A stretch of 64,000 bases of DNA from Macrostomum lignano (GCA_002269645.1 NIVC01002566.1:1-64000); one strand, 5' to 3'. Shown: positions 18,002-51,341, counted from the first letter of the stretch. Notes: generated by a model from the letters alone, not told the origin. A program made the numbers and translations.

Positions 18002-21000
18002 ATGACCGACTCCAAGCAGACTAATATGCAGCCTCTTGTGCTGCACTCTCGGGTGCTTTCGCGTTTCGAAATTGATACGCCATCGCAGTACTTAAACCAT
18101 TACATCCGCCAGCATCGGGCCATCGAGCTGCCCAACGGCGCAATCGCGTTTCTGTCTCATAAGCCGGACGACTTTGATGACGACAGCAGCAGCAGCAGAA
18201 GCAGCTCCGATATCGGGCCTGCAAATATGAAATCCGGGGCTGACGATGAGTCGAATGTGTTCTACGACAATGTCGAAAATGATACGACCAGCTGCGACAA
18301 GGAGTCCTCAGCCGACTGCAGCCTGCAGAGAAGCCGATTCGCTTTGGTGTGCTTCAGCATCGGCGTTGGCAGACTGCACGAGCCGTCCGACTGTCGGGGC
18401 CTCGCCGAACTGTGCCTTCGATTGATTTTTTTCGCCTGCAATCATCCGCAGATGCAGAGTCTCGAGAGCAGCTTTGACGATACCACTGTTCAGACTCTAG
18501 ACGAATCGATCTGGAACCAAGAATCGCACTACCACGCTGAAGTATTCGATGACCGATCCGAGTGCAGCTTTGTGGTCGACTCGGACGTCCTGCCGGCCGT
18601 TCTGCGGGTGACTGTTTTTGCAATTAAACTCACTTGGCGGGGGTTGCAGCCTAATGGTTAGAGCGTCGGATTCACGACTTGAAGGTCGGGGGTTCGATTC
18701 TCGATCCCACTGGAACAATTTGTGTCCTTGACCAAGACACTTTGAGTGCCAGCATTAGCTGGTGTAATTGAGGGTGTGTGTGGCGATCCCCCAATCCTTT
18801 GACTGAACAGCCGTACGCAGCCTTCAGATGCACCACGCAATTGCTGCGGCTGAGCTGTCGGTTGCACATCTGCCCATTAGGGCATGCAATTACGAGTAGT
18901 TTAACACAGATGTAATTCGTATTTTACTGAGAAAAACAAATCAATGTCAAATGAACTAAAATGTAATGCTACTATAGATCTATTATATTCTAGCTTATAT
19001 ATAGTTACATTTAGGTTAAATCTAGAAGTCATGTTAGAGCTCAGGGGTCGCTTTTTTAAGACCAAAATTTCATAACGTCGAAAGCAATTGCATGGTCCTT
19101 CACAAGACCGAACTATCTAACTCTATCTTACCCTGCTCTATCTTACCCTTGATTCACACGAGCCAGCGGAACCAGTTAAGATCAGTAGCAAAGTTAGGAT
19201 GAATTCGATAAAATAACAAGTGAAGAAAAGATGTTAAACCCTCGCGTTAAGTATAATAAATTTTCCTCAAGCAACCTTGAAAGTTTAATCATCACAAAAC
19301 CCAGACTCGCAATCTGGCTGATTCCCACGGACCCTACACAATCGTCCGTCATCTCAAACAACTAATTATTAAATGTAGTTGAATCACCGGCCCACATAGA
19401 ATACGTGCATAGAGACCCTTTAAAGTGTAGTTAGACTTTTAAGCAGCCTGCACTCGTCCTTTACAATGCAGTCACCAAGCACCGGTGGCTTTTTGTAAGA
19501 GTATGCCTGTTAACAACTGCTACACTCCACCACATAATAGTAATAATAATATTTGATTACACCTGCCCCAATTGGGCCAGATGTGCAACCTGAAGGCTGC
19601 GTACGGCTGTTCAGTCCAAAGACTGGGGGTCGCCACACACACCCCAAACTAGCCCAGTTAATGCTGGCAGCCATTTTACAGCAGAGTTAACTGAACCAAT
19701 GCAAGTTAAGTATCTTGCTCAAGGACACAGATCGAGAATCGAACCCCCGACCTTCAAGTCGTGAATCCGTACTCCACCACGTTCTGATAACACTGCAATT
19801 TTTCTAATTCCTTAACCTAAATCCTATTCTTAATGGTCCCTCAAAAAGTCCCTAAATTATATCAGATTAAATATGATCCTTACCCATACTAAAATACAGA
19901 GCCTTGGCGCCAGCATAATGTCTCCAGAATTCAACGAAGTCTACATTGAACGCGAGCAGAAGAAACTGCGCTCAAAATGCCTACGTGAAGGCCTGCCACC
20001 GTTGGACCTTCTTGAGCGCAGTTCTGGAAATCCGGACCATCCGTTCAACCGCTTGGTGCTGGACAATGCGAATACAGTGGCCTCAATCGGCAGCGAAGAC
20101 GTGAAAAAGCGACTGTTTGAATTTCACGCCAAGTATTATTCGGCTAAGCTATTGCGGATGGCTCTCGTGTGCAGCAAACCGCTGGACGAATTAGAGGTTA
20201 GTCTCTTTTTTAACGAGTATCATTATATAGTTATTTCCAATTGTATATCCATACAAGGGCTGTGTATCTAACATAGCAGTGGTAAAGACCAAGACCCAGG
20301 TTCTGTACACCCAGTGTGCTTGTGAATGTTCTACACAAAAGCATGTCCAATGGTCCAGACTAGTTAAAAGTCACAGATTAGCCGCTTTGCCAACCTCACA
20401 TTTCAGGAAATTTTTGTTGAAGCATTCGAAAGTCTGCCCGGCGAGCCCGTTCCTCGCATCAGATTTAACTGTCATCCGTACGACGGTTCGGAGACTGGAG
20501 TCAAAGTAAAAGTTTTTGCGTTTTTGCGTTTTTGCTTTTTTGCCCATCGAAATGTTCTTTTATCATTTTTTTATCAAACAGTACTCAGCAGTCAAACAGT
20601 CAAACAGTACTCATAAACATAGACAATTACATAGACAATTCTCTAATTCTCTAATAGACAGTAATCTGTAATTTAGCCCCTGATGCTAAAGCCCCTGGTA
20701 CTACACCATTTTACCCTCGATTTTGAACAAGGAGAACTTCGAAACTGACAAACTCCTCTTCAATATTGACACTCTATGGTCGGGCACTCAAAATCTACAA
20801 TCAATATTGACAGATCAAGCTTCAATTTTGACAAACTCTGGTTCAATTTTGACAATGCACGTTTAGTCAACTTCTCCTGGGAGAATTCGGTAACAAAGTA
20901 ATCCAATGAAAGCCTGAACGGGGCTGAAGTGAGCTGTGCAAAATCAGCTTATTCTGACTTTGCTTTTTGGATCTACAAGTATTGATAAAATTTATTTTTC

Positions 21001-24000
21001 TCCATCCTTTACACACAGACTAAAATAGCCTGACTGGTTGGGCTGCAAAGTCTGATTCTATTTTGACAGAGTTGCTTCAAAACTGACACTCTATGGTTTG
21101 TGTACCCAAAAAGTCCGCTTCATTTTTGACAACTCCGAATCAATATTGAACAGTTAACAATCAATTTTGACTAAGACAGTTTTTGAAATAGATTTTGACA
21201 ATTTTTACTAAGATTTCTCTCTTGAGGGGGGGGGGGGTACTTGCTATTTGGGAGAAGGGGTACTGGCTGCATGTATCTACGAGTACATGTATATAGAGTG
21301 TCAGTTTTGAAGCAACTCTGTCAAAATAGAATCAGACTTTGCAGCCCAACCAGTCAGGCTATTTTAGTCTGTGTGTAAAGGATGGAGAAAAATAAATTTT
21401 ATCAATACTTGTAGATCCAAAAAGCAAAGTCAGAATAAGCTGATTTTGCACAGCTCACTTCAGCCCCGTTCAGGCTTTCATTGGATTACTTTGTTACCGA
21501 ATTCTCCCAGGAGAAGTTGACTAAACGTGCATTGTCAAAATTGAACCAGAGTTTGTCAAAATTGAAGCTTGATCTGTCATTCTTATTTGATTCTGCGTGC
21601 AGGATTGCTGATCTGGCACGCCCAAGCGTGCAGAATTGATGTTGTCTATGGCAAATTATCCTTTAGGTCTAATGCATCTTACGTGCAGGATTGCACTTTA
21701 TTTTTAGACAACAAGAAAACAACGAGTGAAAATTGGTTAATATCATTCCTAGTTTTTCGCTTGCGATCAGATGCTACTCAAATACAAATTCAATGACGTT
21801 GGTGTCACCATTGGCTCTAATCTTCAAATTCTTCCGATTTTCCGGAATAACTCGCACACAGCGCACCGAGCCCGACGTAGGATCGTTGATAACGTCAACT
21901 GGGTCACTAGCCTCAGTGCCTACAACTTGAGGGTCGGCCGTAGTAGCCACCTCCACGGCAGCCGTTAGTTGATGGCTCATAGCACAAATCGCTTGCTCTC
22001 GTTTATTCCCTCGTCGAATGTAGCGCTCGACGGATGCACCTCGCTTGTGGCCAGTCACTTTAGCGATAGTTTCGACATTAAATCCAGCGTCGTGAAGTTC
22101 TGTGATTACAGTTGCACGCACACACTGCACACCATTGTCAGTCAGAAACTTCTCGAAACGACCGACGGAAGCCAATTCCTTTGCAATGGTTGATTGACAC
22201 TGATTCTCACGTTCAACTTGCTGAGCAAGGCTCTCCAGTTCATCCAGACTTGCATTCGACATCGGGTCAGTCGCTAGCAGCTTCTCTAAATCGGCGTCAG
22301 CAATTGCATCCAACATGGGCAGCAGCCATTCGTTCTCTCTTTCCCACTTGCTAGAAATGGCTGCAATTGCCACCTCTTCGGATGACAAACCGTCGACGGT
22401 TGCGTATCGCATGTCCATAAGCGGAGGAAGAATCGACGGGTTGATTAGAGAAACCATTGCTTTGTTTTTATAGTGGCAACTAGCTTTCAATTGTAATCTC
22501 CTTTCGTTACCCCCTCCCCTCACCATCTCCAGCGTGCAAGATTGATTTTGTCTATGGTTAAAATGTGGGGGCTTCGCCCCCACGCCCCCAGCGGGGGCTC
22601 TGCCCCCACACCCCCGCTAGCAGCGGGTAATGTCTATAGTAATATCAATTATAACCTCCTTTTTTGGGCAGAATGTAAAATGGAAGAATCAAATAAGAAT
22701 GAGATTCATGCACGCCAACTCGTGCGTCTATGGCAAAGAGCACTCGTGCGCTTCGCGCACTCGTGCCTTTGCCAATGACGCACTCGTTAGCGTTCAAGAA
22801 TCCTAACAATATTGATTGTAGATTTTGAGTGCCCGACCATAGAGTGTCAATATTGAAGAGGAGTTTGTCAGTTTCGAAGTTCTCCTTGTTCAAAATCGAG
22901 GGTAAAATGGTGTAAAGCCCATGGTACTAAAGCCCATGGTGCTAAAGCCCCTGGTGCTAAAGCCCCTGTTGCTAAAGCCTCTGGTGCTAAAGCCCCTGGT
23001 GCTAAAGCCCCTGGTGCTAAAGCCCCTGATGCTAAAGCCCCTGATGCTTAAGCCCCTGATGCTAAAGCCTCTGGTGCTAAAGCCCCTGGTACTAAAGCCC
23101 CTGGTGCTAAAGCCCCTGGTGCTAAAGCCCCTGGTGCTAAAGCCCCTGGTGCTTAAGCCCCTGATGCTAAAGCCCCTGATGCTAAAGCCCATGGTGCTAA
23201 AGCCCATGGTGCTAAAGCCCCTGATGCTTAAGCCCCTGGTACTAAAGCCCCTGGTGCTAAAGCCCCTGCTGCTAAAGCCCCTGGTGCTAAAGCCCCTGAT
23301 GCTAAAGCCCCTGATGCTAAAGCCCATGGTGCTAAAGCCCCTGCTGCTAAAGCCCCTGATGCTTAAGCCCCTGATGCTAACGCCCCTGGTGCTAAAGCCC
23401 CTGCTGCTAAAACCCCTGCTGCTAAAGCCCCTGATGCTAAAGCCCCTGGTGCTATAGCCCCTGCTGCTAACGCCCCTAGTGCTAAAGCCCCTGGTGCTAA
23501 AGCTCCTCGTGCTAAAGCCTACATGAGTACGTCACTGTAGGAGTAGCTTATCGCTGCATCCTAATTAACACAGCTCAAAATGGTAGCTACGCGCTAAAGT
23601 TTCTGATAGGCGACAGTTTTATTAGAAAGTCTTCCAGAATAACAGTTTTTTTCAATAAAAATGCTAACAATGTACCTAGCGCCCTTTCTATGATCATCTG
23701 CAAGACACTGCAACTAATCTAAAAAAGACATATTCATCGACGACACTTACTTGCAGCACATTTTGCTATTTTGCCCTACGGCAGGTTCGTACGGATTGTT
23801 TAAACTCGAGATTCTGCAACACAGTCGAGATTGTGTTTCCCCTGCCAGACCAGAGTCCGCTGTACAAGACCTCGCCAGACCTGTACGCTTTGTTGATGCT
23901 GCAAAAAAGCGGCAACAATGCTCACTAGAGGCCTGCCTCCACCGACACGGTCTGGGCTTCTGCGACGTCGGATTGTTGGACAGAGGAACTCTGGGCTTCG

Positions 24001-27000
24001 ATTCTTTTCACATCTGCATCAGGGGAATGAAAAATGTTCGCGACAGTGAAGATCGGGTGAGCGGAAGTTATGCTTTTTCAATTATTTAGCAGTTAAATTG
24101 CTTTTTATCTAGAGTCTTACGTTTTAAGTGCTTAAAAGAATTATAAAAAGAGCAAATGGCATAATACTACCATAGAGAAAATGTAAGGCTACATTCTGTA
24201 TCACGTGTTGGAAAAATCCGGCCGATAAAGCCTTTCCATCTGGCCTTTAAAACTTTTGTGTTCCTTACTACCAAGACCTTCTTAGTAATCAAGGAACAAT
24301 CACTTCTAGCTACTGCTAGGCAACCCAGTAATCAAATGAAGGTATTTATTACCTTGAGTCCTGACTAGTCGTACTCTTCCTGTGAGTTGATCTCGCAATA
24401 GGATTCAGTTAGATCAGTTGATCTGGCGCCTTACTTCTTGTTCTGGTCCGAGTCTTCTTTGTGCTCCTTGACTTCTTGCCGGCCGGTGTGGTATCTGTAG
24501 TTCGGACCAATAGGAAGCTTCGAATTAACTATGGGATCCCTGCGCCAATCTGCGGTTTCAATTAAGCCTTCTCCTTCTAGCAGTGCTTCAATGCACTCTA
24601 GGTATAGCTCCGGTAATCACTGATAGTCCTCTAAGATCCATCAGGGTAGCCTTCTGGAGACAACAACCAATGGAGTCTTAAAATAGACTCTAGAGTCTCA
24701 ACAGACTCAAACACAACAATAATAATAAGTCGACTCAAACAACGGGCGCAAATGAGTAAGGCTTACCGCAAGAACTCGACCGAGTCTCTGTAGGAAGTCT
24801 TCGTATTGCTTCCTCTTCGGAGCTTCTCCTTCTGGAGTCTTGTTGTTAGCTCCGGGTCGGCTTCGGACCACTTGTATTTATAGGCAAACGGACCCCTCGC
24901 GAGGTCGTCCATCACATTTTCGTAAATGTCAAAAGGTCGCGCTTTGGTGGCTGTCAAGCATGACAGGGTAGAAGGTTAAGCAACTGGTCTAGTGTAGCGC
25001 GCATGATTGGTTACCGTAGCTGGGTTAATTGGGGCTTTCTTTGATAGGTTCACCCGGTGCAGGCCGGATGATGAATCGCAGGTGGGGTTTAAACTTGACA
25101 ATTGTAGGTCACACGTGATTGGTCGGCTGCTAAAATAGCATGTTCGAATTTTCTTTCTTGTGATTGGTTGATTAAAATATATCTGTGATTCAGTACTTGT
25201 TATTATACATGCTACTTACTATACTACTGAATAAAACTTATAAGTAGTATTTTAACTGTTTTATGTCTTTTTTACGAGAGGTAGAAAACTCTACAAAACT
25301 TCACAGTAGCAACTCGGCCCGCTAAAGGTTTGTGTCGCTTTTAAGCTTTCTTCTCTCCCCGCTCTCTCTTTTTATCTCTCATCTCATCTATCTTGTTAAT
25401 CTCTATCTATTGAATTGTATTGTATTCTATCTATCTATTGATCTCTATCTATCTCTATCTCTTTCATTGAGTTGTATCTTTTACCTGACGTTTGAGCCAA
25501 GAAAGCTCGTCAAGCCCTGTCCAAGATATTACTTAAACACCGGTAGGGTTCAGAGTAGCCCCGAATCAGTGGAATCCTGGCGGAATCCTGCGTCTAAAGT
25601 ACGCCCTGTTTATGACCCACTACATGCCTGATAGCTAAAAACCAAGCCCGTTGTACACAACCCTGTACGAGTGTTGTGTTATCCTATGATAGTCATGGGT
25701 CAACAGGATGAACAGAGTTGCTTACATCCTCGCTACCTTGGTGTTGACTGTCGTCTTCTCGATTTTCAGCAATGCTATCCACCTCGAGAATGAACTAACT
25801 AGCAAACGACAACAATAACGGAGGTTTCAACATAGCTTATCTAAACAATATGAATTAGCTTTGTTAAAATCCTTGTTTTTAACATATTGCAGGCAATCAC
25901 TGCCGTGTTTCGGTACCTTGCCATGCTTCGAAAGCTTGGACCGCAAGAGTGGTTGTTCGAGGAAGCTCGCCTAGAAGGCCAAAAAGCCCTTGATGTCGGT
26001 CTAAACGACTGGGAATACTATCCATTTGTTCGCAGCAATATCTGCCTTCAGCGATATCCGATGCAGGACCTGCTGAGAGCGCATCGAGTGCCATGCGACT
26101 ACTCGCCAACAATAATATCCGAATTCTTGAATTTGCTGACTCCCGACAGATGCAAAGTGTACGTTTTCGAAGCTGGCGTCAACAAAAACTGTCCAAGTAA
26201 GTGCTTGAGTTAATACGGTACAGAAATATTTAGCTAAGTATTCAGACTTGAAGGGAACAGATGAATGAAACAGCATGTTTTTTACAAACTAGGAACCTTT
26301 AGCTTTTGTTAAAATCTTCATCTTTTTTAGATAAAAAGGTTAATATTGACACAGTTCACTCGTACAATGTATGTTGAGTGATCATGTCGATAATTTTGTG
26401 AAAGTGCACCAGGCTGCACTATTTTCAAGCACAAATATTTGAAAGTATAGTTAATGAGAAATCTAAGCGTCCACGTCCCCTCAAAAGGCTTCTTTCTAAA
26501 ATCATTCCTTATTATAGCGTAGACCACAGATACTATATAACTAGATAGGTCACTCCCTATCTCGCTGTGGGGACCAAAAATGATACTACTCTTAGGACGG
26601 TAGTGTAAATGCAAATTATAAGAAACATTCTTATCAGTGACTAAAACGAAATCGATCGGAAATGAAGTTTTCAACCATATGCACAATCTTCTACAGTGTA
26701 CATTCTTGACTCAAGGACTACTTAAGTAGAAGGACGCAAGACTCAGAATTGGTGAAAATTTCATTGATGGCCGATTTTTCAATGTATCTCCTGTGTACGC
26801 TATTGATCGTAAGATGCTTATTTTTGCGCAGAATAGGCAGCAACATATGCCCTTTCATTTAAGACATCAATAAGTTGAAAAATTCGGACTTGAAACACCT
26901 CAAAATTCTTGTCAGCAGTACAATCCTATATACTAAAAAATCATCTAAAATTGCTGATTTTATTGTCAAAATAAACAAGAAGAAAACGTCAAAACAGACG

Positions 27001-35437: not shown

Positions 35438-38400
35438 ATGCAACAGAGCCTAAAGCTTCCACAGCAGCAGTCGCCATCCCAGTCCAAGCAGCCTGAATCG
35501 GTAAATCAGCGACCAAGTGTCACAATGTCCATAAAAGTTCGCGACAACAATGTACCCTTAGTAAAAGGAATCGAAGCTTATAAGCACACAAAACGACGAT
35601 GCCTGGAGCTGTCGAACGGTGCCAGTGTTCTTCTTATTAGCTGGTCAAACTTGGAGCAGATTCAGGGCTTCTTCGATCCCTACAGCGTGTTTCTTTGCGT
35701 GAACCTCAACATTGGCCGGCTTCACGACCCACCCGATTGTGTAGGCCTTGCCGAGTTGTGCCAACGACTGACGCTCTGCGGCTCCAAAAAATATCCGAAC
35801 GACGAGCAGGCTGGTAAGTCAGTCAGTCCGTCTGAATCTGCTTGGCTAATTTTGCGGTGCGCTGTGGCTTTTTAAAATGGAACAGCATTTCAGCTACTAG
35901 CTGAAAGACCTAGTAGGGACGATTGACAATTCACCTGCACACCAAAATCTCGTTAACCGCTTGGTGATCAGGATGCTAGCACACCCCGGTACAGTATACG
36001 ATCGCTACTCGTACGACGTACATGTTGCTCTGGTGCATCTATAACTGGTTAAAATGCCACGACGATTGATGGTTCAAGTTATTGAATCACCCTAATCGCA
36101 GTCTAATCGCAGTCCTCCAAGGACTGGGAGGTAGCCACACACCCTCAATAACCCCAGCTAATGCTGGGTACCCATTTTACAGCTGGGTGAACTGAAGCAA
36201 TGTAGAGTTAAGTGTCTTGCTCATTACTCAAGGACACAAATTGTTCTAGTGGGATCTGGAATCGAACCCCCGGACCTTTCATTAGGGAGTCCAATGTTCT
36301 AACCACTAGGCTGCAATCCAGTTAACATTTAGTAATGTTAATAAACATTGTTTAGTATAATATCCGTGTTTGTTTTGTACATTGTTCTGAAAAAAGTTTT
36401 GGTGTATAAGAGATCCCTAGGGAAATCAAAATTTGGTTCTTACTCAAGAAAAAATGCGAGTTGCTGACAAAACTGCGCCTAATTTGCAGGTCTGCTCACG
36501 AAAGTTCAGAGAGAAAGCAGCTCATACTCAGAAGAGATCACAATCGGGCAGCCGCAACAAGAAAGCCATAGCAACTCAATATTGTCCGAATCATTCGATT
36601 TCGACCCGCTCGCTCGAATTGAGGTCACCGAGGATCAGACAATTTACACTTTTACCCTGGAAACCAACTATCAGTTGGAGATGTTTCTGGACCATCTCTG
36701 CGCCGGGTTGCAGTGTCCGCTGTTTAACAAGACGGCAGTGGAGCGGCAGGTGCAAATCTGGCAGGCAGTCTCTAAGACGAATGCGCCCTCCCTAATAGAC
36801 CAGTTAGAGCACTGCTCGGGTGACGCCAAGCATCCCTACAACCGGCTGCACCGTCAAAGTGGCCGAACTGTTGATAAATTATCTACCGATGAGCTAATTA
36901 ACCAACTGAAAGAATTTCACTCGAAAAACTATTCCGCTAATCTGTTGCGATTGGTGCTGTCGTATGCGAAGACACTGGACGAAATGGAGGTTCGTAACAG
37001 TCGTTAATATGTGGTTGTAAAGATTACCATGGCTATAAATAACTTATGCACCAAATACTCGAATTGACAGGCAATGGTGCTGGAGTCTCTGGGTGGAATG
37101 CAAAACTTATCGCTTCCACGTATTCGCTTTCCTCGTCACCCGTACGATGGTACGGAAATGGCAGTAAAGGTAAAATTGTGCCGTAAGCCTGAAGCCAATT
37201 CTTTCAAAGTATTTCAATTTTTATTGCGCCAAGAGACACAAAAAAGTTTATAAAAATAAAATGGCAACACATTAAAATTCAGCCACAAGCAAAGCTAGCG
37301 TTTTAAGATAGGCGACTCATCATTAACCACTTATGTGGCCATAGAAACTAATGTGAAAATTTAGCTACTCGCGTCAGCGCAAAGACAAAGCGTCCAGTGT
37401 TTACTATCGAAATGTCTATAAATCAACAGTACTTTGTACGTTTGCAGAAGGTCTTAATTGTTTATTATTACACTAATTACAATATTTCAGATATACTTGG
37501 CCTTATGACACATATTTAATTTTGCTAATTTTTACGTTTTCCCAGACATCGGAAGTCGTTTCCTTTTACGAGTATTTCATTTGAACCCAAAAACAGATGC
37601 AATGAAAAATTAAATCAACAACATTAACCGAGTAATTATTCGAATAGAAAAGTTTTAATAGTAGTACCAATAGTCGTTCAGAGTGAATAATATTACTATT
37701 AAAAGCCTAATAATTAGCGAAGTTAAATCCGTGGGCTTTATTATATAATCTACGTGGTACTACTCACAAACATAATATATTAACGGTTTGATAGTACAAT
37801 GGAGTAAAAACTGTTTTACTGCCGTGTACAGCTGATTTATAAGAAAATCTAGTATAGCGTCTTTCTACGTGTTCTTCATTCGTCTGTGCCTCCATGGCTA
37901 CATGTACGCCACCACCAACAAATTCTACGAGAAAAGGTGATAAGACCTTGAAAACCTATCAACTCATTCTGTAGGTTCGCATCAAAGGTAAATCTCTCGG
38001 TGGAATTTACATTGTGTTCGCACTGCCAGACCAGTCTACTAAGTATCTGTCGTCGCCAGATTTATTCTTAACCTTTCTGATGCACGTTGACGAGCGCGGC
38101 GGGTTGCAAGACTGTCTGCAGAGATTCGGACTGGGCTATTGTCAGTGCCGACTGTTGCCTAGCGGCAATCTAGGCTTTGATTCGTACTGCATCGCCATCA
38201 AAGGCATGTGTAAAGTTCGCGATGCGGAGAACAGAGTGAGTAGATCTATATGTGCTCAGATTATATAAAGATTGGTCAAAATGCATATTAAATAGTCTCG
38301 CTGTAGAACGGAGAGGTGAACTTAGGTACGCGGAGTGGGGCTCAAAGTAGAGCTCGAATCACAGTGGAAATCTTACCAGACCAGTTCGGGACACTCGGCA

Positions 38401-44400: not shown

Positions 44401-47400
44401 ACTGGCTTTAGAAGCCGAACTAGATTTGGAAATTTCCCGTAGCGACAGTGGAATTCAGATCTGCGCTGCAGGCTACAGTCAGCCTCTGCCCCTGCTGATG
44501 TCGACTGTGATGCAGAAGATTACAGAGCTGGATATTACTGAAACTTCGTTTTCAAGGGTAAGAATTGCTTTGACACGTACGGGGGGAATTGTCCGCAGTT
44601 TCTGACACTTTTAATTCCATTTTTATACAAATTTGCTGTCATGGTAAAGTGCATGGCACATTACTTATTTCTGATAAATTTAATCCCGGATGTGTTGGTC
44701 TGTTCATTAAAAATTTGAGCTTTTAAGCAAATTTGAGCCTGTTTCGCAACCTCCACACTCGCCGGAACTCGCGCCAGCCGATTTCATTATTTTTCCGCAG
44801 CTGAAGGGGCGAGCTGTTCGATGGGGTGAGTTGATGCCAGCAAGGATCATTTGGAAGACAAGATCTGGTGCAGACTCCCCAAGGTATTTCAGGACAGTGC
44901 TGTTTTAAAGCGATTGACGGGATGCTCAAGCCATAGAGGAAGTGTGTTGCTACAGGTGGAGAGGATGCTCAAGCCGTGGAAGAAGTGAGTTGCTACAGGT
45001 GGAGAGAATGCTCAAGCCGTGGGAGAAGTGACTTGCTACAGGTGGAGAGGATGCTCAAGCCGTGGGAGAAGTGAGTTGCTACAGGTGGAGAGGATGCTCA
45101 AGCCGTGGGAGAAGTGAGTTGCTACAGGTGGAGAAGATGCTCAAGCCGTGGGAGAAGTGAGTTGCTACAGGTGGAGAGGATGCTCAAGCCGTGGGAGAAG
45201 TGAGTTGCTACAGGTGGAGAGGATGCTCAAGCCGTGGGAGAAGTGAGTTGCTACAGGTGGAGAGGATGCTCAAGCCGTGGGAGAAGTGAGTTGCTACAGG
45301 TGGAGAGGATGCTCAAGCCGTGGGAGAAGTGAGTTGCTACAGGTGGAGAGGATGCTCAAGCCGTGGGAGAAGTGAGTTGTTACAGGTGGAGAGGATGCTC
45401 AAGCCGTGGGAGAAGTGAGTTGCTACAGGTGGAGAGGATGCTCAAGCCGTGGGAGAAGTGAGTTGCTACAGGTGGAGAAGATGCTCAAGCCGTGGGAGAA
45501 GTGAGTTGCTACAGGTGGAGAGGATGCTCAAGCCGTGGGAGAAGTGACTTGCTACAGGTGGAGAGGATGCTCAAGCCGTGGGAGAAGTGAGTTGCTACAG
45601 GTGGAGAGGATGCTCAAGCCGTGGGAGAAGTGAGTTGCTACAGGTGGAGAGGATGCTCAAGCCGTGGGAGAAGTGAGTTGCTACAGGTGGAGAGGATGCT
45701 CAAGCCGTGGGAGAAGTGAGTTGCTACAGGTGGAGAGGATGCTCAAGCCGTGGGAGAAGTGAGTTGCTACAGGTGGAGAAGATGCTCAAGCCGTGGGAGA
45801 AGTGAGTTGTTACAGGTGAAGAGAATGCTCAAGCCGTGGGAGAAGTGAGTTGCTACAGGTGGAGACTGTGTTGAGAAGGATGTCTTAATTAAAAGGCGAT
45901 TATGATAATTTAAGCCAACGATCTGTTTATATAAGGACAAACCATCGCCTTTTATATCCGTTGTCACAGTCACTGCTAAGACTATTAGTGGCATCGCGAC
46001 GCTTTCTCAAGCATAAATTTCCAACGCACATGACCATAATACGAGATTGAATTTATCAGAAGAAAGAAATGTACCGCTTTAATACTCGTATGGCACCAAC
46101 AAATTTGTGTTTGCAGCCGCTTCCAAAAGTGTCCGAACTTTCCGGACAACCCTCTTCCATGCATTGACTGTGATGAGTTGAATTTTACTACTAGTTCTGA
46201 ACAACTCTACTAGTAGTAGCGCAGCAGAGTTTCGCCGATTTTTTCAGGCTCGTTTATCAGTGAAGTCCTCTCTGAAGAACGACGAGGACGCTGATTCTTC
46301 GGAGGCACTGCAATGCTTGACGCTCATTCTGGGGACGCCGGCTGCGATGAACTGGCCGCACCGGGACAAGAGCTCAGAAGCGAAGAGTAAGAAGAGCTCA
46401 AAGATAATAATTATTTCATGCTTAAATAAGAAAGCGTCATTCAAAGAGAGTTGAGGTATAGTAGAGTTCAGTGCGGAAATGCATATTAGAAAAATTAACA
46501 ATGATAAATTTCCCAACGGTTTCCTGCAAACAGACACCTATGAATTATCCAGTAATAATAAATACACCTGCCACAATGGGGGGGGGCACACAGCCTCAAT
46601 TACCCCAGCCAATGCTGGCACCCATTTTACAGCTGGGTGAACTGAAGCAATGCAGCTAGGCTACAACCGCAACACTAGGCTACAACCCCAACACTAGGCT
46701 ACAACCGCAACACTAGGCTACAACCCCAACACTAGGCTACAACCCCAACACTAGGCTACAACCCCAACACTAGGCTACAACCGCAACACTAGGCTACAAC
46801 CGCAACACTAGGCTACAACCGCAACACTAGGCTACAACCCCAGCACTAGGCTACAACCCTAACACTAGGCTACAACCCAACACTAGGCTACAACCCCAAT
46901 ACTAGGCTACAACCCCAATACTAGGCTACAACCCCAATACTAGGCTACAACCCCAATACTAGGCTACAACCGCAACACTAGGCTACAACCGCAACACTAG
47001 GCTACAACCCCAGCACTAGGCTACAACCGCAACACTAGGCTACAACCGCAACACTAGGCTACAACCCCAACACTAGGCTACAACCTCAACACTAGGCTAC
47101 AACCCCAGCACTAGGCTACAACCCTAACACTAGGCTACAACCCAACACTAGGCTACAACCCCAGCACTAGGCTACAACCCCAATACTAGGCTACAACCCC
47201 AATACTAGGCTACAACCGCAACACTAGGCTACAACCGCAACACTAGGCTACAACCCCAGCACTAGGCTACAACCGCAACACTAGGCTACAACCGCAACAC
47301 TAGGCTACAACCCCAGCACTAGGCTACAACCGCAACACTAGGCTACAACCCCAACACTAGGCTACAACCCCAACACTAGGCTACAACCCCAACACTAGGC

Positions 47401-50400
47401 TACAACCCCAACACTAGGCTACAACCGCAACACTAGGCTACAACCCCAGCACTAGGCTACAACCGCAACACTAGGCTACAACCCCAACACTAGGCTACAA
47501 CCCCAACACTAGGCTACAACCCCAACACTAGGCTACAACCGCAACACTAGGCTACAACCGCAACACTAGGCTACAACCGCAACACTAGGCTACAACCCCA
47601 ACACTAGGCTACAACCCCAACACTAGGCTACAACCCCAACACTAGGCTACAACCGCAACACTAGGCTACAACCGCAACACTAGGCTACAACCGCAACACT
47701 AGGCTACAACCCCAACACTAGGCTACAACCCCAACACTAGGCTACAACCCCAACACTAGGCTACAACCCCAACACTAGGCTACAACCCCAACACTAGGCT
47801 ACAACCCCAACACTAGGCTACAACCGCAACACTAGGCTACAACCGCAACACTAGGCTACAACCGCAACACTAGGCTACAACCCCAGCACTAGGCTACAAC
47901 CCTAACACTAGGCTACAACCCAACACTAGGCTACAACCCCAATACTAGGCTACAACCCCAATACTAGGCTACAACCCCAATACTAGGCTACAACCCCAAT
48001 ACTAGGCTACAACCGCAACACTAGGCTACAACCGCAACACTAGGCTACAACCCCAGCACTAGGCTACAACCGCAACACTAGGCTACAACCGCAACACTAG
48101 GCTACAACCCCAACACTAGGCTACAACCTCAACACTAGGCTACAACCCCAACACTAGGCTACAACCGCAACACTAGGCTACAACCCCAACACTAGGCTAC
48201 AACCCCAACACTAGGCTACAACCCCAACACTAGGCTACAACCCCAACACTAGGCTACAACCGCAACACTAGGCTACAACCCCAGCACTAGGCTACAACCG
48301 CAACACTAGGCTACAACCGCAACACTAGGCTACAACCCCAACACTAGGCTACAACCCCAACACTAGGCTACAACCCAACACTAGGCTACAACCCCAACAC
48401 TAGGCTACAACCCCAACACTAGGCCACAGCCCAGAAAGGATCGAGAAAGGGCCAGTGACAGCAGAGGCAAAGAAACTCAGCGCCAAACATGTCCGACTCT
48501 CGCACCACACGATCCCCTTGGTTCGATTCGGTGTGCAGCCCCATTTATCGTAATTGTGAACAAAAATATTGGTCTGACCGTTGTCGCACGATTCACACAG
48601 AGTGTACATGCCCGATGATTAGAAAGTCATGGCTGCTGTACACCTTGTATGAGCGTGTGGATGAGTGCGTGTCTGAGTACAATATCTGGAAGAATGCCCC
48701 CCTGTGCTGATTGTGGAACAATTTCGCCGATATTCAGAGCAAACTCTCCTGCAAATATCTATTAATAAGGACAAAATTGATTCCCTAACATTCGATTATT
48801 TGTCTATTTCGTTTAAGACAAAACAAGAAATAATATTTTTGCAGAGGCAACCTATGAAAGCGTACTGAAGTTTGCCCAGGACAACTACGGTCCATTGTTC
48901 ACTCGTTTACAAAAGCAGCAGCAGCAGCAAAAGTCACCGCAGCCACAGCAGTCTCCGCCCCGACAGCTGTTTATAGAGGTGCTTGTTTATGGCAATGCCA
49001 AAGCAAAAGAAGCAGTGGCCGCGGCAAAGAAAATCCTGGACAAAGTCTCTTCGCAACAGTCTCCAGCAGCAGCAGCAAAAGCTTTGTCACCTTCATCTTG
49101 GGAGTCGCTGAAGAGCCGAGGCGTCCTACTTCCACCGGGAAGTCACTATCTGCTTAAATTGCCGAGTAGCACAAAATCAGGCATGGCGTCGAGTTGCGTG
49201 GTCGTCTTTCAGTTCGTTACGCCTCTTTCTCTTAAAACTGGTGAAAAAATTGCCCAGGATTTTCTTTTTGATTTGCTTCTGCGGATTCTTCGTCTGAACA
49301 TTGAACAGAGCGACGTACCCGGTTGTGCTCAGGTCCAACTGGAGCAGATACCCGGCCATCACGGAAATATTCTTGTGATCGATGCCGCGTCTATCACTCA
49401 GCACCCAACTGTGGTACGTGCAGCGTTATGAAATGCTCATTTTATTATTAGGATTTGTTATATAAATAATCAGGGATGTCATGTATCAGAAATCAAGGAT
49501 GCATCAGGGATTCCAGGATCAGGGATGCCAGCATCAAGGATGCCAGCATCAAGGATGCCAGCATCAAGGATGCCAGCATCAAGGATGCCAGCATCAAGGA
49601 TGCCAGCATCAAGGATGCCAGCATCAAGGATGCCAGCATCAAGGATGCCAGCATCAAGGATGCCAGCATCAAGGATGCCAGCATCAAGATCAGGGATGTC
49701 AGGGATCAGGGATCAGGGACGCCAAAGCTAACTCCAATAGTGCTGCATACTTGTACATGTATACTTTTGATATTCATTTGTTAAAAGGGCTGCAACCACG
49801 TCTACACACGGGGTATTTATTCACAAGCTACTTCTTCGAAATGTTTTTTGTTATACTTGCAATTTTGATCCCAGATTGAAGATCAAATTGAATCTTTCAT
49901 CGGACGTACTGAAGCAATGATCAATACAGCTCTGGCCAACCCGGCATTCGATTGGAGACAGGGTTGTAAAGAAATGATTGAGACAAAGACTTGCCGGAAC
50001 GTTACTCAGCAGGGCGGCTTCTATTGGAAAGCTATCACTGGCTCGGCATACCGATTCGCCTGGGACACTAGCTCCGGAGCCTACCAGAACCTGCCGGAAA
50101 ACTTTGACAAAACAGTCAACAAAGAGTTGATCGCTCTGTGTCAGGTACCGACTGTCGAGTATGGGTTGAGTTAAAGTGGGTGTTCCCAACCAGTTTTATT
50201 AACTCCTCTTCGACACCCTTACGTCCCGATCTCTAGGCTACGCTACATACCGACAGAAAACGTCATTGGAAATGGCTTCCGGCCATGAACAAAAATCTCA
50301 ATAAGTATGGACGATAGATCTTTTATTCCCTAGATAGGCCACTTTGTATTGCGGCAATAGGGAAAGAGCGATCGTTGTTTATCGGTTGCTTAAATTTTGA

Positions 50401-51341
50401 GTTCAATAGCTTAGGGACATACATGTAGGCGCTATTTTTTTGAGAATTTGATAGAACTTGTGGAACGGACATTTCCACAAAGGAGGTAAATAAATTCTAC
50501 TATTCAAACTAAGAATTATGCATGCAGAGACTACTGACGAAATTGAGTTCAGTAGTTGATTGTAAAGTTGTAAAGTTGTGGAGTTGTAAAGTTTTCAAAT
50601 TAGCTTATATGGTCACTATAGTGGTTGATGAGTCGCCCATCTTGTGTATATATAATCTTTGGTATGGACTTTTGAATAAACTACTTTTTAATAAACTGTC
50701 TTGATTATATATGGCCAGAAGCCATACTCCCGACCACAGATCATAAAAGCACTAGATGTGTCAACTCACAATATGAACGCAATGGAGTCGGAGTTGGGCG
50801 TAGTTCGGACAGACTCGATCACATAGACTTTGTGTGACCACATGTTTTTCATTTAGTTGACAAATCTCGGGTTCTTAGGATCTGTGCTGCCGACTCTTTT
50901 TTTAAAACTCGGGTTGGCAATCTATTTTTACGCTCAGGATAAAATAAATGCTCGTCAACTATATCCACCAGGTCCCTTAAGTCGTATATATTTGCTAACT
51001 TCAAGCTCGCTAGTCTCAACGTTTTAATTCCAGAGATTTTTAAAACCTGAATCGCCTGAACGTCGAAAACTGTCAATTCACAAGGAGTCGAAATTGAAGT
51101 TCGACGGAGCAACGGAAAACTTTTACTCCAAGTACAAGGTGCGGATTTTTATAAAAATCGCACACTATTGAAGACATTTCACAAACACTAAATGAGTAGC
51201 TTTGAGTTTTCGATCTTGATTTTTCTGTCTTTCTCAACATTTCAGGGCAAGGCGATTAAAAATCTGTTGGAGTTTCGTCAGAGCCTGAAGCAGTGCCCTC
51301 CAGTACCGTCTGAAATTCTCGACTGTGTTCACGAACTTTGA
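35438..51341 (+). CDS. Gene B: insulysin/IDE-like M16A pseudo-peptidase with a duplicated N-half (N1-N2-C), ~1,650 aa, 17 exons, open throughout
   Basis: Exons: 35438-35813, 36490-36989, 37071-37169, 37975-38235, 38843-39158, 40207-40400, 40852-41550 (GC donor), 41624-41722, 42009-42293, 42764-43118, 43701-43903, 44171-44557, 46248-46386, 48845-49413, 49875-50144, 51034-51138, 51246-51341. Phases are all consistent with no internal stop, and the IDE landmarks match gene A (e.g. GLAELCQRLTLCGSKKYP vs IDE GLSHFCEHMLFLGTKKYP). Confidence 0.88.
36110..36316 (-). mobile_element. SINE copy, same family
   Basis: cccattttacagctgggtgaactgaagcaa…gaatcgaacccc…ttctaaccactaggctgcaa. Confidence 0.85.
39316..39625. 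repeat. 21-bp minisatellite (cattttggcgccgcgggcaat), ~15 copies, followed by a MITE-like end (…gcgacgcccctg at 39762)
   Basis: Read directly. The right end resembles the TIR of the 13640 MITE, but no left TIR or TSD was found. Confidence 0.85.
43240..43642. repeat. 15-bp minisatellite (ggggcgccagcacca / ggggctttagcacca)
   Basis: The flanking units are the reverse complement of the 22913 array unit. Confidence 0.95.
44578..46154 (+). mobile_element. Decayed mariner-type transposon remnant
   Basis: 44750 onward reads PPHSPELAPADFIIFPQLK (mariner YSPDLAPxD motif), and the C-terminal RKCVATGG…GDCVEK ends at 45878. Degenerate TIR-like ends lie at 44578-44612 and 46125-46154. Confidence 0.75.
44919..45860. 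repeat. 43-bp minisatellite, ~22 copies, amplified from the mariner transposase 3' end
   Basis: Unit ggagaggatgctcaagccgtgggagaagtgagttgctacaggt, which reads MLKPWEK*VATGGE in one frame. Confidence 0.92.
46587..46655 (-). mobile_element. Partial SINE (core only), continuing into the 19-bp array
   Basis: cctcaattaccccagccaatgctggcacccattttacagctgggtgaactgaagcaatgcag. Confidence 0.8.
46656..48423. repeat. 19-bp minisatellite (cactaggctacaacc[c/g]caa), ~90 copies
   Basis: Read directly. cactaggctacaa is the reverse complement of the SINE 5' end (t/c)tgtagcctagtg. Confidence 0.95.
49515..49690. repeat. 15-bp minisatellite (atcaaggatgccagc), ~11 copies
   Basis: Read directly. Confidence 0.93.

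What the first reader, a model, noticed from the sequence alone, without database searches (positions are those of the whole stretch)
18002..51341. Two tandem genes encoding tripartite N-N-C insulysin-like proteins (IDE N-half duplicated and fused in frame)
Seen: what looks like four separate IDE-like starts (18002, 28570, 35438, 40852) resolves into two genes. In A, the hinge exon 28298-28458 ends TTA|gtaagc (phase 0) and the next acceptor ttttag| at 28569 opens the second N module in frame (AESVSISQQDD). In B, hinge exon 40207-40400 ends GAG|gtgagt and acceptor ccctacag| at 40851 is again in frame (FSTIRSESSTL). Neither N2 module has its own ATG, and neither N1 has C-half exons. Known: IDE and nardilysin are ~1,000-1,200-aa clamshells with one N-half and one C-half joined at this hinge loop. 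Inference: ~1,650-1,700-aa proteins with an extra N-half, an M16 architecture I do not recognise. The extra half could be an added binding lid or change how the chamber assembles.
Basis: partly seen in the sequence, partly recalled or inferred. Interest (0 to 1): 0.92.

Follow-up and report, generated by a model that had tools for sequence, protein, structure and literature searches.

The report
Flatworm three-half dead insulysin genes
This stretch of the flatworm Macrostomum lignano genome holds tandem genes for relatives of insulin-degrading enzyme that have lost their catalytic residues and carry a second, in-frame copy of the N-terminal half (N-N-C, about 1,650 residues); public transcript-based gene models confirm this layout, but I found no paper that describes it for this protease family.

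Summary
The window is Macrostomum lignano contig NIVC01002566.1, positions 1-64000. It holds two 17-exon genes: A (18002-34184) and B (35438-51341). Each is built as N1 (6 exons), N2 (5 exons) and C (6 exons). Both predicted N1-to-N2 junctions (28458|28570 and 40400|40852) appear exactly in deposited protein models built from RNA-seq transcripts: P0001 (1650 aa), P0169 and P0153. A third tandem paralog, of which only a 3' remnant lies in the window (15355-16972), has the same N-N-C layout and a phase-0 junction elsewhere in the genome.

N1B is under purifying selection (pN/pS 0.08, p=5e-6). It folds in AlphaFold2 as a complete IDE N-half (TM 0.68-0.70 to human IDE).

- All N modules lack HxxEH and the distal Glu, and the C halves have lost (B, gene 0) or half-lost (A) the R/Y pair, so these are pseudo-proteases.
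- In this window gene A has a 1-nt frameshift in N1 exon 4 (A6 at 23903-23908; other copies are intact). Its annotated ORF is therefore 1272 aa.
- One intron of gene B is GC-AG.

The main rival is SL trans-splicing, because the leader ends in ATG. The annotation cut no boundary at these junctions, and the conserved donors also argue against it. Function is unknown. This is a new architectural variant of a known family, so far seen only in this species.

The parts
18002..18607 (+). Gene A, N1 exon 1 (ATG 18002). Dead zinc motif GLAELCLRL at 18398-18424.
   Evidence: UniRef models use the alternative donor 18587.
19900..20196 (+). Gene A, N1 exon 2
20407..20505 (+). Gene A, N1 exon 3. The conserved donor is at 20505; model P0002 uses the alternative donor 20485.
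23785..24056 (+). Gene A, N1 exon 4. It is 272 nt and frameshifted at the A6 run 23903-23908 (other copies have A7), giving an in-frame TAG at 23926. The annotated 1272-aa ORF starts at ATG 24027.
25893..26196 (+). Gene A, N1 exon 5
28298..28458 (+). Gene A, N1 hinge exon, with donor TTA|GTAAGC (phase 0)
28459..28569 (+). Gene A, N1-to-N2 intron (111 nt). It has no AATAAA/ATTAAA. Read-through would stop after 6 codons.
28570..29292 (+). Gene A, N2 exon 1. It has no ATG before residue 122. Dead motif GLAELCHRL at 28813-28839.
29410..29508 (+). Gene A, N2 exon 2
29797..30072 (+). Gene A, N2 exon 3
30625..30973 (+). Gene A, N2 exon 4
31090..31289 (+). Gene A, N2 hinge exon
31554..31928 (+). Gene A, C exon 1 (domain 3)
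32218..32353 (+). Gene A, C exon 2
32429..33126 (+). Gene A, C exon 3 (domains 3-4)
33516..33779 (+). Gene A, C exon 4
33893..34000 (+). Gene A, C exon 5
34089..34184 (+). Gene A, last exon with stop at 34182-34184
35438..35813 (+). Gene B, N1 exon 1 (ATG 35438). Dead motif GLAELCQRL at 35744-35770.
36490..36989 (+). Gene B, N1 exon 2
37071..37169 (+). Gene B, N1 exon 3. The window record's annotated CDS starts at Met 37074.
37975..38235 (+). Gene B, N1 exon 4 (261 nt, intact)
38843..39158 (+). Gene B, N1 exon 5
40207..40400 (+). Gene B, N1 hinge exon, with donor GAG|GTGAGT (phase 0)
40401..40851 (+). Gene B, N1-to-N2 intron (451 nt). Read-through would stop after 18 codons. AATAAA at 40457, which is no denser than in the other introns.
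40852..41550 (+). Gene B, N2 exon 1. It has no ATG before residue 229. Dead motif GLAQLCQRL at 41071-41097. It ends in a GC donor (GAG|GCAAGA).
41624..41722 (+). Gene B, N2 exon 2
42009..42293 (+). Gene B, N2 exon 3
42764..43118 (+). Gene B, N2 exon 4
43701..43903 (+). Gene B, N2 hinge exon
44171..44557 (+). Gene B, C exon 1 (domain 3)
46248..46386 (+). Gene B, C exon 2
48845..49413 (+). Gene B, C exon 3
49875..50144 (+). Gene B, C exon 4
51034..51138 (+). Gene B, C exon 5
51246..51341 (+). Gene B, last exon with stop at 51339-51341
15355..16972 (+). 5'-truncated remnant of a third tandem paralog, 'gene 0' (Mlig021631g1, 332 aa). Exons: 15355-15894, 16299-16565, 16701-16802, 16883-16972. It encodes only the last ~330 residues (domain 4).

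Best explanation
The locus is part of a tandem cluster, so far seen only in Macrostomum lignano, of insulin-degrading-enzyme (M16A) paralogs: gene 0, gene A and gene B. Each gene is transcribed and cis-spliced into one mRNA that encodes a six-domain N1-N2-C protein of about 1,600-1,655 residues.

Shown:
- Each N module is a full IDE N-half: domain 1, domain 2 and the hinge. N2 plus C makes a complete four-domain IDE-like unit.
- N1 is joined to N2 by about 50 residues that AlphaFold2 predicts with low confidence.
- All N modules have lost the HxxEH zinc site and the distal Glu. The C halves have lost (B, gene 0) or half-lost (A) the substrate-clamping R/Y pair. So these are pseudo-proteases. 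Canonical HFCEH-bearing IDEs exist elsewhere in the genome.

Inferred (origin):
- One tandem duplication copied the N-half exon block. The phase-0 donor of the hinge exon, which originally spliced to the first C exon, now splices to a phase-0 acceptor at the start of the second copy.
- This happened before the A/B split and very probably before the three genes diverged.

Inferred (function):
- The protein is most likely a non-catalytic binding or scaffold protein with no signal peptide.
- N2-C would form the usual clamshell. The tethered N1 bowl would act as a second lid, competing for the C bowl or pairing with the C bowl of another molecule.

In this window gene B is intact. Gene A carries a copy-specific 1-nt frameshift in N1 exon 4, and gene 0 is a truncated remnant.
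For: Junctions and frames.

Transcript evidence:
- Transcript-derived GenBank models span the N1-to-N2 junction in all three paralogs: P0001 (1650 aa), P0169 (1272 aa) and P0153 (1208 aa).
- The annotation method cuts genes at mapped SL and poly(A) sites (PMC5730564).
- P0001 uses the GC-AG intron at 41550, which ab initio predictors rarely call.

All three N1-to-N2 introns are phase 0, with donors GTAAGC, GTGAGT and GTTAGT. The first two fit the species' cis-donor motif GT[G/A]AG (PMC8629364); GTTAGT departs from it at the third base.

Selection, from comparing the window with sister contig L001:
- N1B: 12 synonymous vs 3 non-synonymous changes, pN/pS 0.08, p=4.6e-6.
- All modules together: 0.21, p=7e-10.
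- There are no indels in any gene B exon.

Fold and domains:
- Pfam for N1B: M16 35.3 bits, M16_C 26.9 bits, first third of M16_M 29.0 bits. N2B is similar. CB has the rest of M16_M at 68.5 bits.
- AF2 N1B: pLDDT 79.6, pTM 0.82. The top Foldseek hits are human IDE, TMq 0.68-0.70 over ~520 columns.
- AF2 N2B+CB: pLDDT 83.5, pTM 0.87. It aligns to all of IDE (~1060 columns, E=3e-50).
- Linker: N1B residues 559-582 and N2B residues 1-28 have pLDDT below 50.

Dead sites:
- HxxEH is absent from all six N modules and present in P0008/P0009.
- At the H/E/H/E/E columns, 98-100 of 105 aligned M16A proteins are conserved; N1B has E/Q/R/Q/V.
- The R/Y pair is Q/H in CB, D/Y in CA and V/R in gene 0.

Tree: the dead family is 100% monophyletic, N2_A+N2_B has 100% support, and no N1_x pairs with its own N2_x.
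Against: - I saw no reads. The RNA evidence is second-hand, through deposited models.
- In the window's own record the annotated ORFs are N-terminally short: A is 1272 aa and B is 1357 aa, starting at 37074. The complete N1B ORF is annotated only on the sister contig.
- Gene A copies carry frameshifts: the window's N1A exon 4, and L001's N2A exon 1 and CA exon 3. Part of the family is therefore decaying.
- N2B+CB shows too few substitutions (2 synonymous, 6 non-synonymous) to test selection on its own.
- The order of duplications is weakly resolved: quartet sites 14:12:9, and N1 clade support is 58% or less.
- The function and the position of N1 relative to N2-C are pure inference. The full 1650-aa chain could not be folded because of the 1200-aa limit.
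- The N2-C model superposes on closed IDE only at TM ~0.5 with rmsd ~12 A, so the inter-half geometry is uncertain.
Confidence: 0.8

Rival explanations
1. Operon with spliced-leader trans-splicing. N1 and N2-C would be separate cistrons on one precursor RNA. The M. lignano spliced leader, which ends in ATG, would be trans-spliced onto the phase-0 acceptors at 28570 and 40852 and would donate the start codon (M-AESVSIS..., M-FSTIRSE...). That would give a normal-length N-C protein plus a separate N1-only protein that ends a few codons past the hinge exon.
For: - The SL is CGGTCTCTTACTGCGAAGACTCAATTTATTGCATG. About 30% of genes are trans-spliced and about 15% lie in operons, with a spacing mode near 100 bp (PMC8629364).
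- The gene A gap is 111 nt.
- The N2 first exons lack an ATG, and their acceptors are in phase 0 with an SL-borne ATG.
- Read-through past the N1 donors stops after 6 and 18 codons.
- In gene B the read-through stop TAA overlaps an AATAAA at 40457.
- The acceptor CTACAG fits the trans-acceptor motif [T/C]TNCAG.
Against: - The annotation pipeline cuts transcripts at mapped SL and poly(A) peaks. It still left the N1-N2 junction inside one ORF in three paralogs and on several contigs.
- GT donors sit at the end of every N1 hinge exon (GTAAGC, GTGAGT, GTTAGT). An acceptor with a cis donor upstream is expected to be cis-spliced (Conrad et al. 1993, as cited in PMC8629364).
- There is no AATAAA/ATTAAA in the 111-nt gene A intron. 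The two hexamers in the gene B intron match the intron background of 2.1 per kb.
- The gene A acceptor TTTTAG does not fit the trans-splice motif.
Confidence: 0.08
2. The N1 blocks are decaying relics that are transcribed but not needed. The functional product would be essentially N2-C, or a short N1 tail plus N2-C, translated from an internal start. The long N-N-C ORFs would be leftovers.
For: - The window's gene A has a frameshift in N1 exon 4, and its deposited ORF starts after it (MKNVRD, 24027).
- The window's gene B model starts at Met 37074 in N1 exon 3.
- The N1 modules are the most divergent (35-39% identity to the others) and carry insertions.
Against: - N1B keeps a 582-codon open frame with all splice sites. 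pN/pS is 0.08 (p=4.6e-6) between two copies that differ by ~2-2.5% in introns.
- N1B is predicted to fold as a complete IDE N-half.
- Other gene A copies have an intact exon 4.
- Three paralogs about 35-45% identical all keep N1.
- N2 has no start codon of its own.
Confidence: 0.07
3. Artefact: a chimeric read-through gene model or an assembly duplication that wrongly places two N-half copies in one gene.
For: - M. lignano is a hidden polyploid with many near-identical copies, and its assemblies are PacBio-based.
- Some UniRef models of this family are clearly forced. P0002, for example, reads 40 codons of exon 4 in the wrong frame.
Against: - The same N1-N2-C order is present on at least four contigs: the window, L001, L002 and the 57.7-kb contig. 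It also appears in two independent annotations (ML2/UniRef and Mlig_3_7/GenBank).
- N1 and N2 are only 35-39% identical, so they are ancient paralogs and not assembly duplicates.
- StringTie introns require spliced reads.
Confidence: 0.03

Closest known systems
Insulin-degrading enzyme / insulysin (M16A; human IDE, e.g. PDB 2G47, 2JG4)
   Same: - All modules are homologous to IDE. N2B exon 1 vs IDE gives E=4e-22.
- The Pfam families M16, M16_C and M16_M are found.
- The N1B model matches IDE at TM 0.68-0.70, and N2B+CB aligns to all four IDE domains.
- The hinge sits at the same place as the IDE 516-541 loop (PMC10604886).
   Different: - The protein has six domains (N-N-C) instead of four.
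- HxxEH, Glu111 and the distal Glu are all replaced, and the R/Y pair is lost or half-lost.
- Identity to IDE is only about 20%.
Canonical M. lignano IDE paralogs (P0008 cluster 'Insulin-degrading enzyme', P0009 cluster)
   Same: They come from the same genome and the same family, and they are the sister clade of the dead family in the NJ tree.
   Different: They are 1035-1200 aa with a single N and a single C, and they keep an intact HFCEH motif.
Single-N dead paralog of M. lignano (P0007, 924 aa; P0006, 921 aa, 5'-partial)
   Same: They belong to the same dead clade (100% support), have a degenerate zinc motif (GLAELLAGM, GLAELCAEL), and group with the N2 modules.
   Different: They have one N-half only. 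P0007 has its own start codon.
Non-catalytic M16 proteins: cytochrome bc1 core proteins and MPP alpha (M16B)
   Same: These are M16 folds that have lost HxxEH and serve structural or substrate-binding roles (PMC12731061). They show that dead M16 halves can be retained for binding.
   Different: They are M16B two-domain subunits that act in hetero-oligomers. They are not close homologs and have no three-half chain.
Dinoponera quadriceps XP_014469183 (P0017, 1835 aa)
   Same: It is a long predicted M16A-like protein with two N-type motifs, both degenerate (HLCQH, HLCQR).
   Different: The motifs are about 945 residues apart, which suggests two whole N-C units in tandem (N-C-N-C) or a read-through model, not N-N-C. 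I did not examine it further.

Membership tests
Peptidase family M16, subfamily M16A (insulysin type) | Sequence homology: Peptidase_M16 (domain 1), Peptidase_M16_C and Peptidase_M16_M profiles | tested here: met
   P0001: M16 76 bits, M16_C 54.9 bits, M16_M 125.9 bits, each in 2 stretches. Per module: N1B 35.3/26.9/29.0 bits and N2B 45.5/23.0/21.8 bits for M16/M16_C/M16_M; CB M16_M 68.5 bits. The second M16_C (domain 4) is not detected by Pfam.
Peptidase family M16, subfamily M16A (insulysin type) | Inverted zinc motif HxxEH in domain 1 plus a distal zinc-ligand Glu (IDE H108, E111, H112, E189) | tested here: not met
   N1A ELCLR, N2A ELCHR, N1B ELCQR, N2B QLCQR; gene 0 QLCNE and RLCQR. At the five conserved columns, 98-100 of 105 aligned M16A proteins have H/E/H/E/E. 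N1B has E/Q/R/Q/V and N2B has Q/Q/R/E/Q.
Peptidase family M16, subfamily M16A (insulysin type) | R/Y pair in domain 4 that completes the active site (IDE R824/Y831) | tested here: not met
   CB has Q/H and gene 0 has V/R. CA has D/Y, so only Y is kept. 97 of 105 aligned proteins have R and Y. The motif is defined in PMC12731061.
Peptidase family M16, subfamily M16A (insulysin type) | A monomer of ~100 kDa made of exactly two halves (D1-D2, ~30-aa hinge, D3-D4) | tested here: not met
   The whole protein has three halves (1650 aa; N1 582 + N2 547 + C 521). The N2-C part alone meets the feature: the AF2 model has pTM 0.87 and aligns over ~1060 columns to IDE.
Peptidase family M16, subfamily M16A (insulysin type) | Alpha-beta roll fold of an IDE N-half in the extra module | tested here: met
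   AF2 N1B has pLDDT 79.6. Foldseek finds human IDE at E=1e-29, TMq 0.68-0.70, rmsd 3.5-3.7 A.
Peptidase family M16, subfamily M16A (insulysin type) | Zinc-dependent peptidase activity | not testable with these tools
   This needs recombinant protein. Absence of activity is predicted from the lost ligands.
SL trans-spliced operon pair (rival filing) | The downstream cistron's acceptor has no cis donor upstream, and the upstream cistron ends in a poly(A) signal | tested here: not met
   Donors GTAAGC and GTGAGT directly precede the acceptors by 111 and 451 nt. There is no poly(A) hexamer in the gene A intron, and the gene B intron is at background density.
SL trans-spliced operon pair (rival filing) | SL-containing reads at the acceptor and poly(A) reads upstream of it | not testable with these tools
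   The evidence is only indirect: the TBONE pipeline, which cuts at such peaks, left the junction inside one gene model.

The most novel reading that the evidence does not exclude
The family is a real 'three-bowl' M16 machine. Two dead N bowls on one chain would share a single C bowl, so the protein could switch between N2:C and N1:C closed states, or daisy-chain through N1:C' contacts. That would be a binding or holding device with a logic unknown in a family that the latest review describes as always two halves.

A second, compatible twist concerns the N2 acceptor. It may be a former spliced-leader acceptor (the SL ends in ATG, in phase with N2). Competition between cis- and trans-splicing at that site could then still yield both N-N-C and N-C proteins from one gene.
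Probability: 0.15. Interest if true: 0.7.

Novelty: new variant of a known kind. Interest (0 to 1): 0.5.

Why it matters
Every structurally or biochemically described M16 protein works as two bowl-shaped halves: M16B dimers, or M16A/C four-domain monomers (PMC12731061). Here a third half is kept in frame and under purifying selection in at least gene B. It is kept in three paralogs that have also lost all catalytic and substrate-clamping residues.

- It is a natural test case for what an IDE-type chamber does without chemistry, for example holding or chaperoning peptides, as has been proposed for catalytically inert IDE.
- It can show how an extra lid changes the way the chamber assembles.
- It is a clean example of exon-block duplication creating a new domain layout in a genome where spliced-leader acceptors are common.

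The limits are real. The family is known from one flatworm species, its function and expression are unknown, some copies are decaying, and the sequences are already deposited as uncharacterised proteins.

Tried and rejected
1. The search for homologous proteins with N2A exon 1 alone found nothing. The word filter missed the divergent relatives; the full spliced gene B protein worked.
2. My first gene B model used the GT donor at 41568 and added six residues. It was replaced by the GC donor at 41550, which matches P0001.
3. My first gene A 3' end was rejected in favour of 32429 and 33893-34000/34089-34184, which match P0169. The rejected version read through to 34030 and used a 42-nt intron, 32354-32395.
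4. I considered that the N1A exon 4 frameshift might be a tiny intron or an assembly error. No GT-AG intron fits. The same frame problem underlies a second model (P0002) and the deposited 1272-aa ORF, while other copies read ...LMLQKKRQQCSLEAC... (A7). I therefore treat it as a copy-specific lesion, though a homopolymer error in this contig is not excluded.
5. I looked for N-type or domain-3 exons of gene 0 upstream of 15355 with HMMs and found none. This copy is truncated, and homology to the intact gene starts mid-exon at 15355.
6. Quartet site counts to order the duplications were inconclusive at 14:12:9. The 12-taxon NJ tree excludes only within-gene N1/N2 sister pairs.
7. The poly(A) hexamer in the gene B junction intron was tested against the intron background and is not enriched.
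8. I did not fold N1-N2 or the full chain. The full chain is over the 1200-aa limit, and a MAFFT alignment of N-C homologs onto N-N would have biased the packing.
9. Literature searches for the gene names and for IDE/M16 together with Macrostomum found nothing.
10. ARAGORN found no tRNA. Pfam found nothing in the neighbouring long ORFs.

Full report
**What the window is.** The sequence is eukaryotic (GT-AG introns, about 45% G+C). A protein search with my spliced gene B model identified the organism as the free-living flatworm Macrostomum lignano. Looking up the deposited gene A protein showed that window coordinates equal positions 1-64000 of GenBank contig NIVC01002566.1 in assembly GCA_002269645.1 (Mlig_3_7).

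**Checking the observation.** I translated all stop-to-stop segments and compared them with each other. This gave four paralogous sets of exons on the + strand, starting at 18002, 28570, 35438 and 40852. Two sets of C-half exons follow the second and fourth sets. An HMM built from the four N modules hits each expected exon (E 1e-10 to 1e-102) and nothing else in the window. An HMM of the C halves finds no C-type exon between N1 and N2.

The junctions read exactly as reported:
- TTA|GTAAGC ... TTTTAG|GCG at 28458/28570.
- GAG|GTGAGT ... CCCTACAG|TTC at 40400/40852.

Both are phase 0 on each side, and both are the best-scoring donor/acceptor combinations. N2A has no in-frame Met before residue 122, and N2B has none before residue 229.

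**Gene models.** Using paralog-conserved intron positions, I built 17-exon models for both genes: 6 N1 exons, 5 N2 exons and 6 C exons.
- Gene B (35438-51341) translates to 1650 residues with no stop. One intron has a GC donor (41550|GCAAGA) at the position where the paralogs have GTTAGT or GTTCGT.
- Gene A (18002-34184) has the same structure, but N1 exon 4 (23785-24056) is 272 nt long. Its three paralogous exons are 261, 276 and 285 nt.
- The first half of that exon is conserved in one frame and the second half in another. The switch lies at an A6 run (23903-23908), and straight reading ends at TAG 23926.

**Independent evidence for the fusion.**
- The gene B model matches GenBank protein BOX15_Mlig000040g5 (P0001, 1650 aa) over its full length. 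There are 14 substitutions and all 16 junctions are identical, including KIPSE|FSTIRSE and the GC-AG intron. P0001 lies on sister contig NIVC01002999.1 (L001), which is collinear with the window and about 97.5% identical.
- Gene A from ATG 24027 is identical over 1241 residues to BOX15_Mlig028065g2 (P0169, 1272 aa). P0169 is the CDS annotated on the window's own contig, and it runs through PVDCL|AESVSIS.
- The BOX15 annotation is transcript-based. It uses StringTie and TACO on RNA-seq plus a de novo transcriptome. A pipeline (TBONE) cuts transcripts at experimentally mapped spliced-leader and poly(A) sites, and ORFs are called by TransDecoder (PMC5730564).

So spliced RNA across both junctions exists, and no SL or poly(A) boundary was called between N1 and N2. 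On the window's own record the gene B CDS starts at Met 37074 in N1 exon 3 (1357 aa), which still spans the junction.

**A third paralog.**
- The exons at 15355-16972 encode the last 332 residues of a third family member (Mlig021631g1, annotated as partial). Homology to the intact gene begins in mid-exon and no upstream exons are present, so this copy is truncated.
- Intact copies elsewhere encode N1-N2-C as well: UniRef P0155 (1602 aa), and GenBank P0153 (1208 aa), which includes the junction.
- On contig NIVC01000654.1 that junction is ...LLLNQ CAG|GTTAGT ... TTTTGAG|GTG VVGCK..., again phase 0.

The N-N-C layout is therefore shared by three tandem paralogs that are about 35-45% identical.

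**Is N1 functional coding sequence?** I compared the window with L001.
- N1B has 12 synonymous and 3 non-synonymous differences (pN/pS 0.08, Fisher p=4.6e-6).
- N1A exons 5-6 show 4 synonymous and 1 non-synonymous difference.
- All modules together give 0.21 (p=7e-10).
- Gene B exons show no indels, and their identity is 99.2-100% in all but one exon (N1B exon 5, 96.8%). Flanking introns are about 97.5% identical.

An AlphaFold2 model of N1B used an alignment of 105 family members and M16A homologs. It has mean pLDDT 79.6 and pTM 0.82. The low-confidence parts are the N-terminus, a lineage-specific insertion (136-165) and the hinge tail (559-582). Its best PDB matches are human IDE (E=1e-29, TMq 0.68-0.70, about 520 aligned columns). 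N1 is thus a constrained, complete IDE N-half.

**The N2-C part.** An AlphaFold2 model of N2B+CB (1068 aa) has pLDDT 83.5 and pTM 0.87. It aligns to the whole of IDE (about 1060 columns, E=3e-50). The overall TM is only about 0.5 with rmsd about 12 A against closed crystal forms, so the relative position of the two halves differs or is uncertain. Domain 4 is folded in the model, although Pfam does not detect it. N2B residues 1-28 are low-confidence. Together with N1B 559-582 this gives a roughly 50-residue flexible tether between the N1 and N2 bowls.

**Catalytic status.**
- IDE binds zinc through His108, His112 and Glu189, with Glu111 as the base (PMC10604886).
- In the window the motif reads ELCLR (N1A), ELCHR (N2A), ELCQR (N1B) and QLCQR (N2B). 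Gene 0 has QLCNE and RLCQR.
- In alignments of 105 proteins, 98-100 carry H/E/H/E/E at the five conserved columns; the flatworm modules do not.
- The R/Y pair of domain 4, which completes the M16 active site (PMC12731061), is Q/H in CB, D/Y in CA and V/R in gene 0.
- M. lignano keeps canonical IDE-type genes with HFCEH (P0008 and P0009 clusters).

The N-N-C proteins are therefore pseudo-proteases. I see no N-terminal hydrophobic signal sequence by eye, but I ran no predictor.

**How widespread is it?** A full HMMER scan of 1.84 billion representative proteins with N1B+N2B (1129 aa) gave 3271 hits at E<=1e-3 but only 24 at E<=1e-30. The top eleven are all M. lignano proteins; the next are ordinary ~950-1000-aa M16A proteins at E about 1e-36 and below. 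No protein from another species among the best 150 shows the N-N-C pattern. An ant protein of 1835 aa (P0017) has two degenerate motifs about 945 residues apart, which looks like N-C-N-C or a read-through model. The dead family also includes a single-N member with its own start (P0007, 924 aa). I found no paper that mentions these genes, or IDE/M16 in Macrostomum. A 2025 review describes all M16 proteins as two-half machines.

**Order of events.** In a neighbour-joining tree the dead modules form a 100% clade, sister to the canonical flatworm IDEs. N2_A and N2_B pair with 100% support, N1_0 and N1_A with 58%, and no N1 groups with the N2 of its own gene. A quartet count for A and B alone is unresolved at 14:12:9. 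The N-half duplication therefore predates the A/B split. Given the shared layout and the phase-0 junction in all three genes, it very probably predates the triplication. The N1B donor lies at the same alignment position as the N2 hinge-exon donors. This fits reuse of the original hinge-to-C intron donor after a tandem duplication of the N exon block (inference).

**The main rival.** M. lignano trans-splices about 30% of its genes to a leader that ends in ATG, and about 15% of genes lie in operons with a spacing mode near 100 bp (PMC8629364). An SL joined at 28570 or 40852 would be in frame and would supply the start codon that N2 lacks. N1 could then end 6 or 18 codons into the 'intron', and in gene B the read-through stop is followed at once by AATAAA.

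Against this:
- Each N1 hinge exon ends in a GT donor. GTAAGC and GTGAGT match the species' cis-donor motif GT[G/A]AG.
- An acceptor with a cis donor upstream is expected to be cis-spliced (Conrad et al. 1993, as cited).
- The gene A intron has no poly(A) hexamer, and the gene B intron has them only at the background density of 2.1 per kb.
- The annotation pipeline, which cuts at SL and poly(A) peaks, did not split any of the three genes at this point.

I rate trans-splicing unlikely as the main outcome. A minor SL isoform cannot be excluded without reads.

**State of gene A.**
- In the window, and in the copy behind UniRef P0002, exon 4 is frameshifted. P0002 hides this by using a donor 20 nt upstream (20485), so 40 codons are read in the wrong frame.
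- The GenBank model instead starts after the lesion.
- Other copies (P0172, P0173, P0174) read ...LMLQKKRQQCSLEAC..., which is what one extra A would give, and encode 1655-1680-aa N-N-C proteins.
- The L001 copy carries two different 1-nt deletions, in N2A exon 1 and CA exon 3. These match the truncated GenBank model P0171 (742 aa).

So gene A is intact in some copies of this polyploid genome and broken in others.

**Mechanism and confidence.**
- Shown: the gene structure, the in-frame junctions, their presence in transcript-derived models, constraint on N1B, IDE-like folds of N1 and N2-C, and loss of the catalytic and R/Y residues.
- Inferred: origin by exon-block duplication, and function as a non-catalytic binding or scaffold protein in which N2-C forms the clamshell and the tethered N1 bowl acts as a second lid or as an inter-molecular connector. 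Catalytically inert IDE can still trap peptides ('dead-end chaperone', PMC10604886), and dead M16 halves are retained in bc1 core proteins. A binding role is therefore plausible but untested.

I put 0.8 on the cis-spliced N-N-C pseudo-protease reading, and much less on any specific function.

**Verdict.** The architecture is unusual for M16. It belongs to a dead, so far single-species paralog family of unknown function whose sequences are already public. I rate it a new variant of a known kind, with interest 0.5.

Noticed in passing
window 15355-16972: This is the 5'-truncated remnant of a third tandem N-N-C paralog (Mlig021631g1, 332 aa 'partial'). Homology to the intact gene starts in mid-exon, and no upstream exons are present in the window.
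   Followed up: yes
window 41551-41623: GC-AG intron (GAG|GCAAGA ... CAACAG|) at the position where the three paralogous modules have GT donors. The deposited model P0001 uses it.
   Followed up: yes
L001 2046-2767 and 7050-7746 (sister contig NIVC01002999.1): The sister copy of gene A has two 1-nt deletions, in N2A exon 1 (GGATCGAAATC to GGATC-AAATC) and in CA exon 3 (GTGCTCCAGC to GTGCT-CAGC). Neither is in a long homopolymer. They match the truncated GenBank model P0171.
   Followed up: partly
window 40852-51341 vs L001: N2B+CB exons differ from the sister contig at only 14 of ~3200 sites (dS 0.005), while N1B has dS 0.03 and introns differ by ~2-2.5%. This may reflect gene conversion or very strong constraint on that part of gene B.
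   Followed up: no
window 33118-33480: A 51-bp unit repeated 7.1 times begins at the end of gene A C exon 3. It therefore repeats the exon's last bases and its GTAGGC donor seven times in tandem.
   Followed up: no
window 44920-45865 and 46656-48432: Two large minisatellites sit inside gene B introns: 43 bp x 22 copies and 19 bp x 94 copies. Smaller arrays lie at 17291-17678, 22908-23519, 39314-39623 and 43263-43644.
   Followed up: no
window 1-4677: A 181-bp satellite array of about 26 copies at ~90% identity sits at the contig start.
   Followed up: no
window 11359-12363, 12907-13593 and 13704-14364: Long open frames upstream of the gene 0 remnant have no Pfam match. One contains an 18-bp repeat encoding (AEAKAA)n. 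They are followed by a 24-bp repeat array.
   Followed up: partly
window 20690-21025 / 21362-21662 and 21774-22583 (-): A near-perfect inverted repeat lies in gene A intron 3. Next to it is a minus-strand 269-aa ORF with a weak tyrosine-recombinase (Phage_integrase) match (E=0.005). This is probably a transposon fragment.
   Followed up: partly
window 18612-18912, 19513-19800, 30136-30430, 15818-16230, 57015-57374: A dispersed short repeat is present in both orientations in introns and flanks (SINE-like). ARAGORN calls no tRNA in the window.
   Followed up: partly
window 52574-54589: Single long ORF (672 codons) just downstream of gene B. On the sister contig it is annotated as a 623-aa protein. 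It has no Pfam match.
   Followed up: partly
L002 1-972 (NIVC01000654.1): Another gene with a Peptidase_M16_M hit lies about 5 kb upstream of the intact gene 0 copy, so the tandem cluster may have a fourth member.
   Followed up: no
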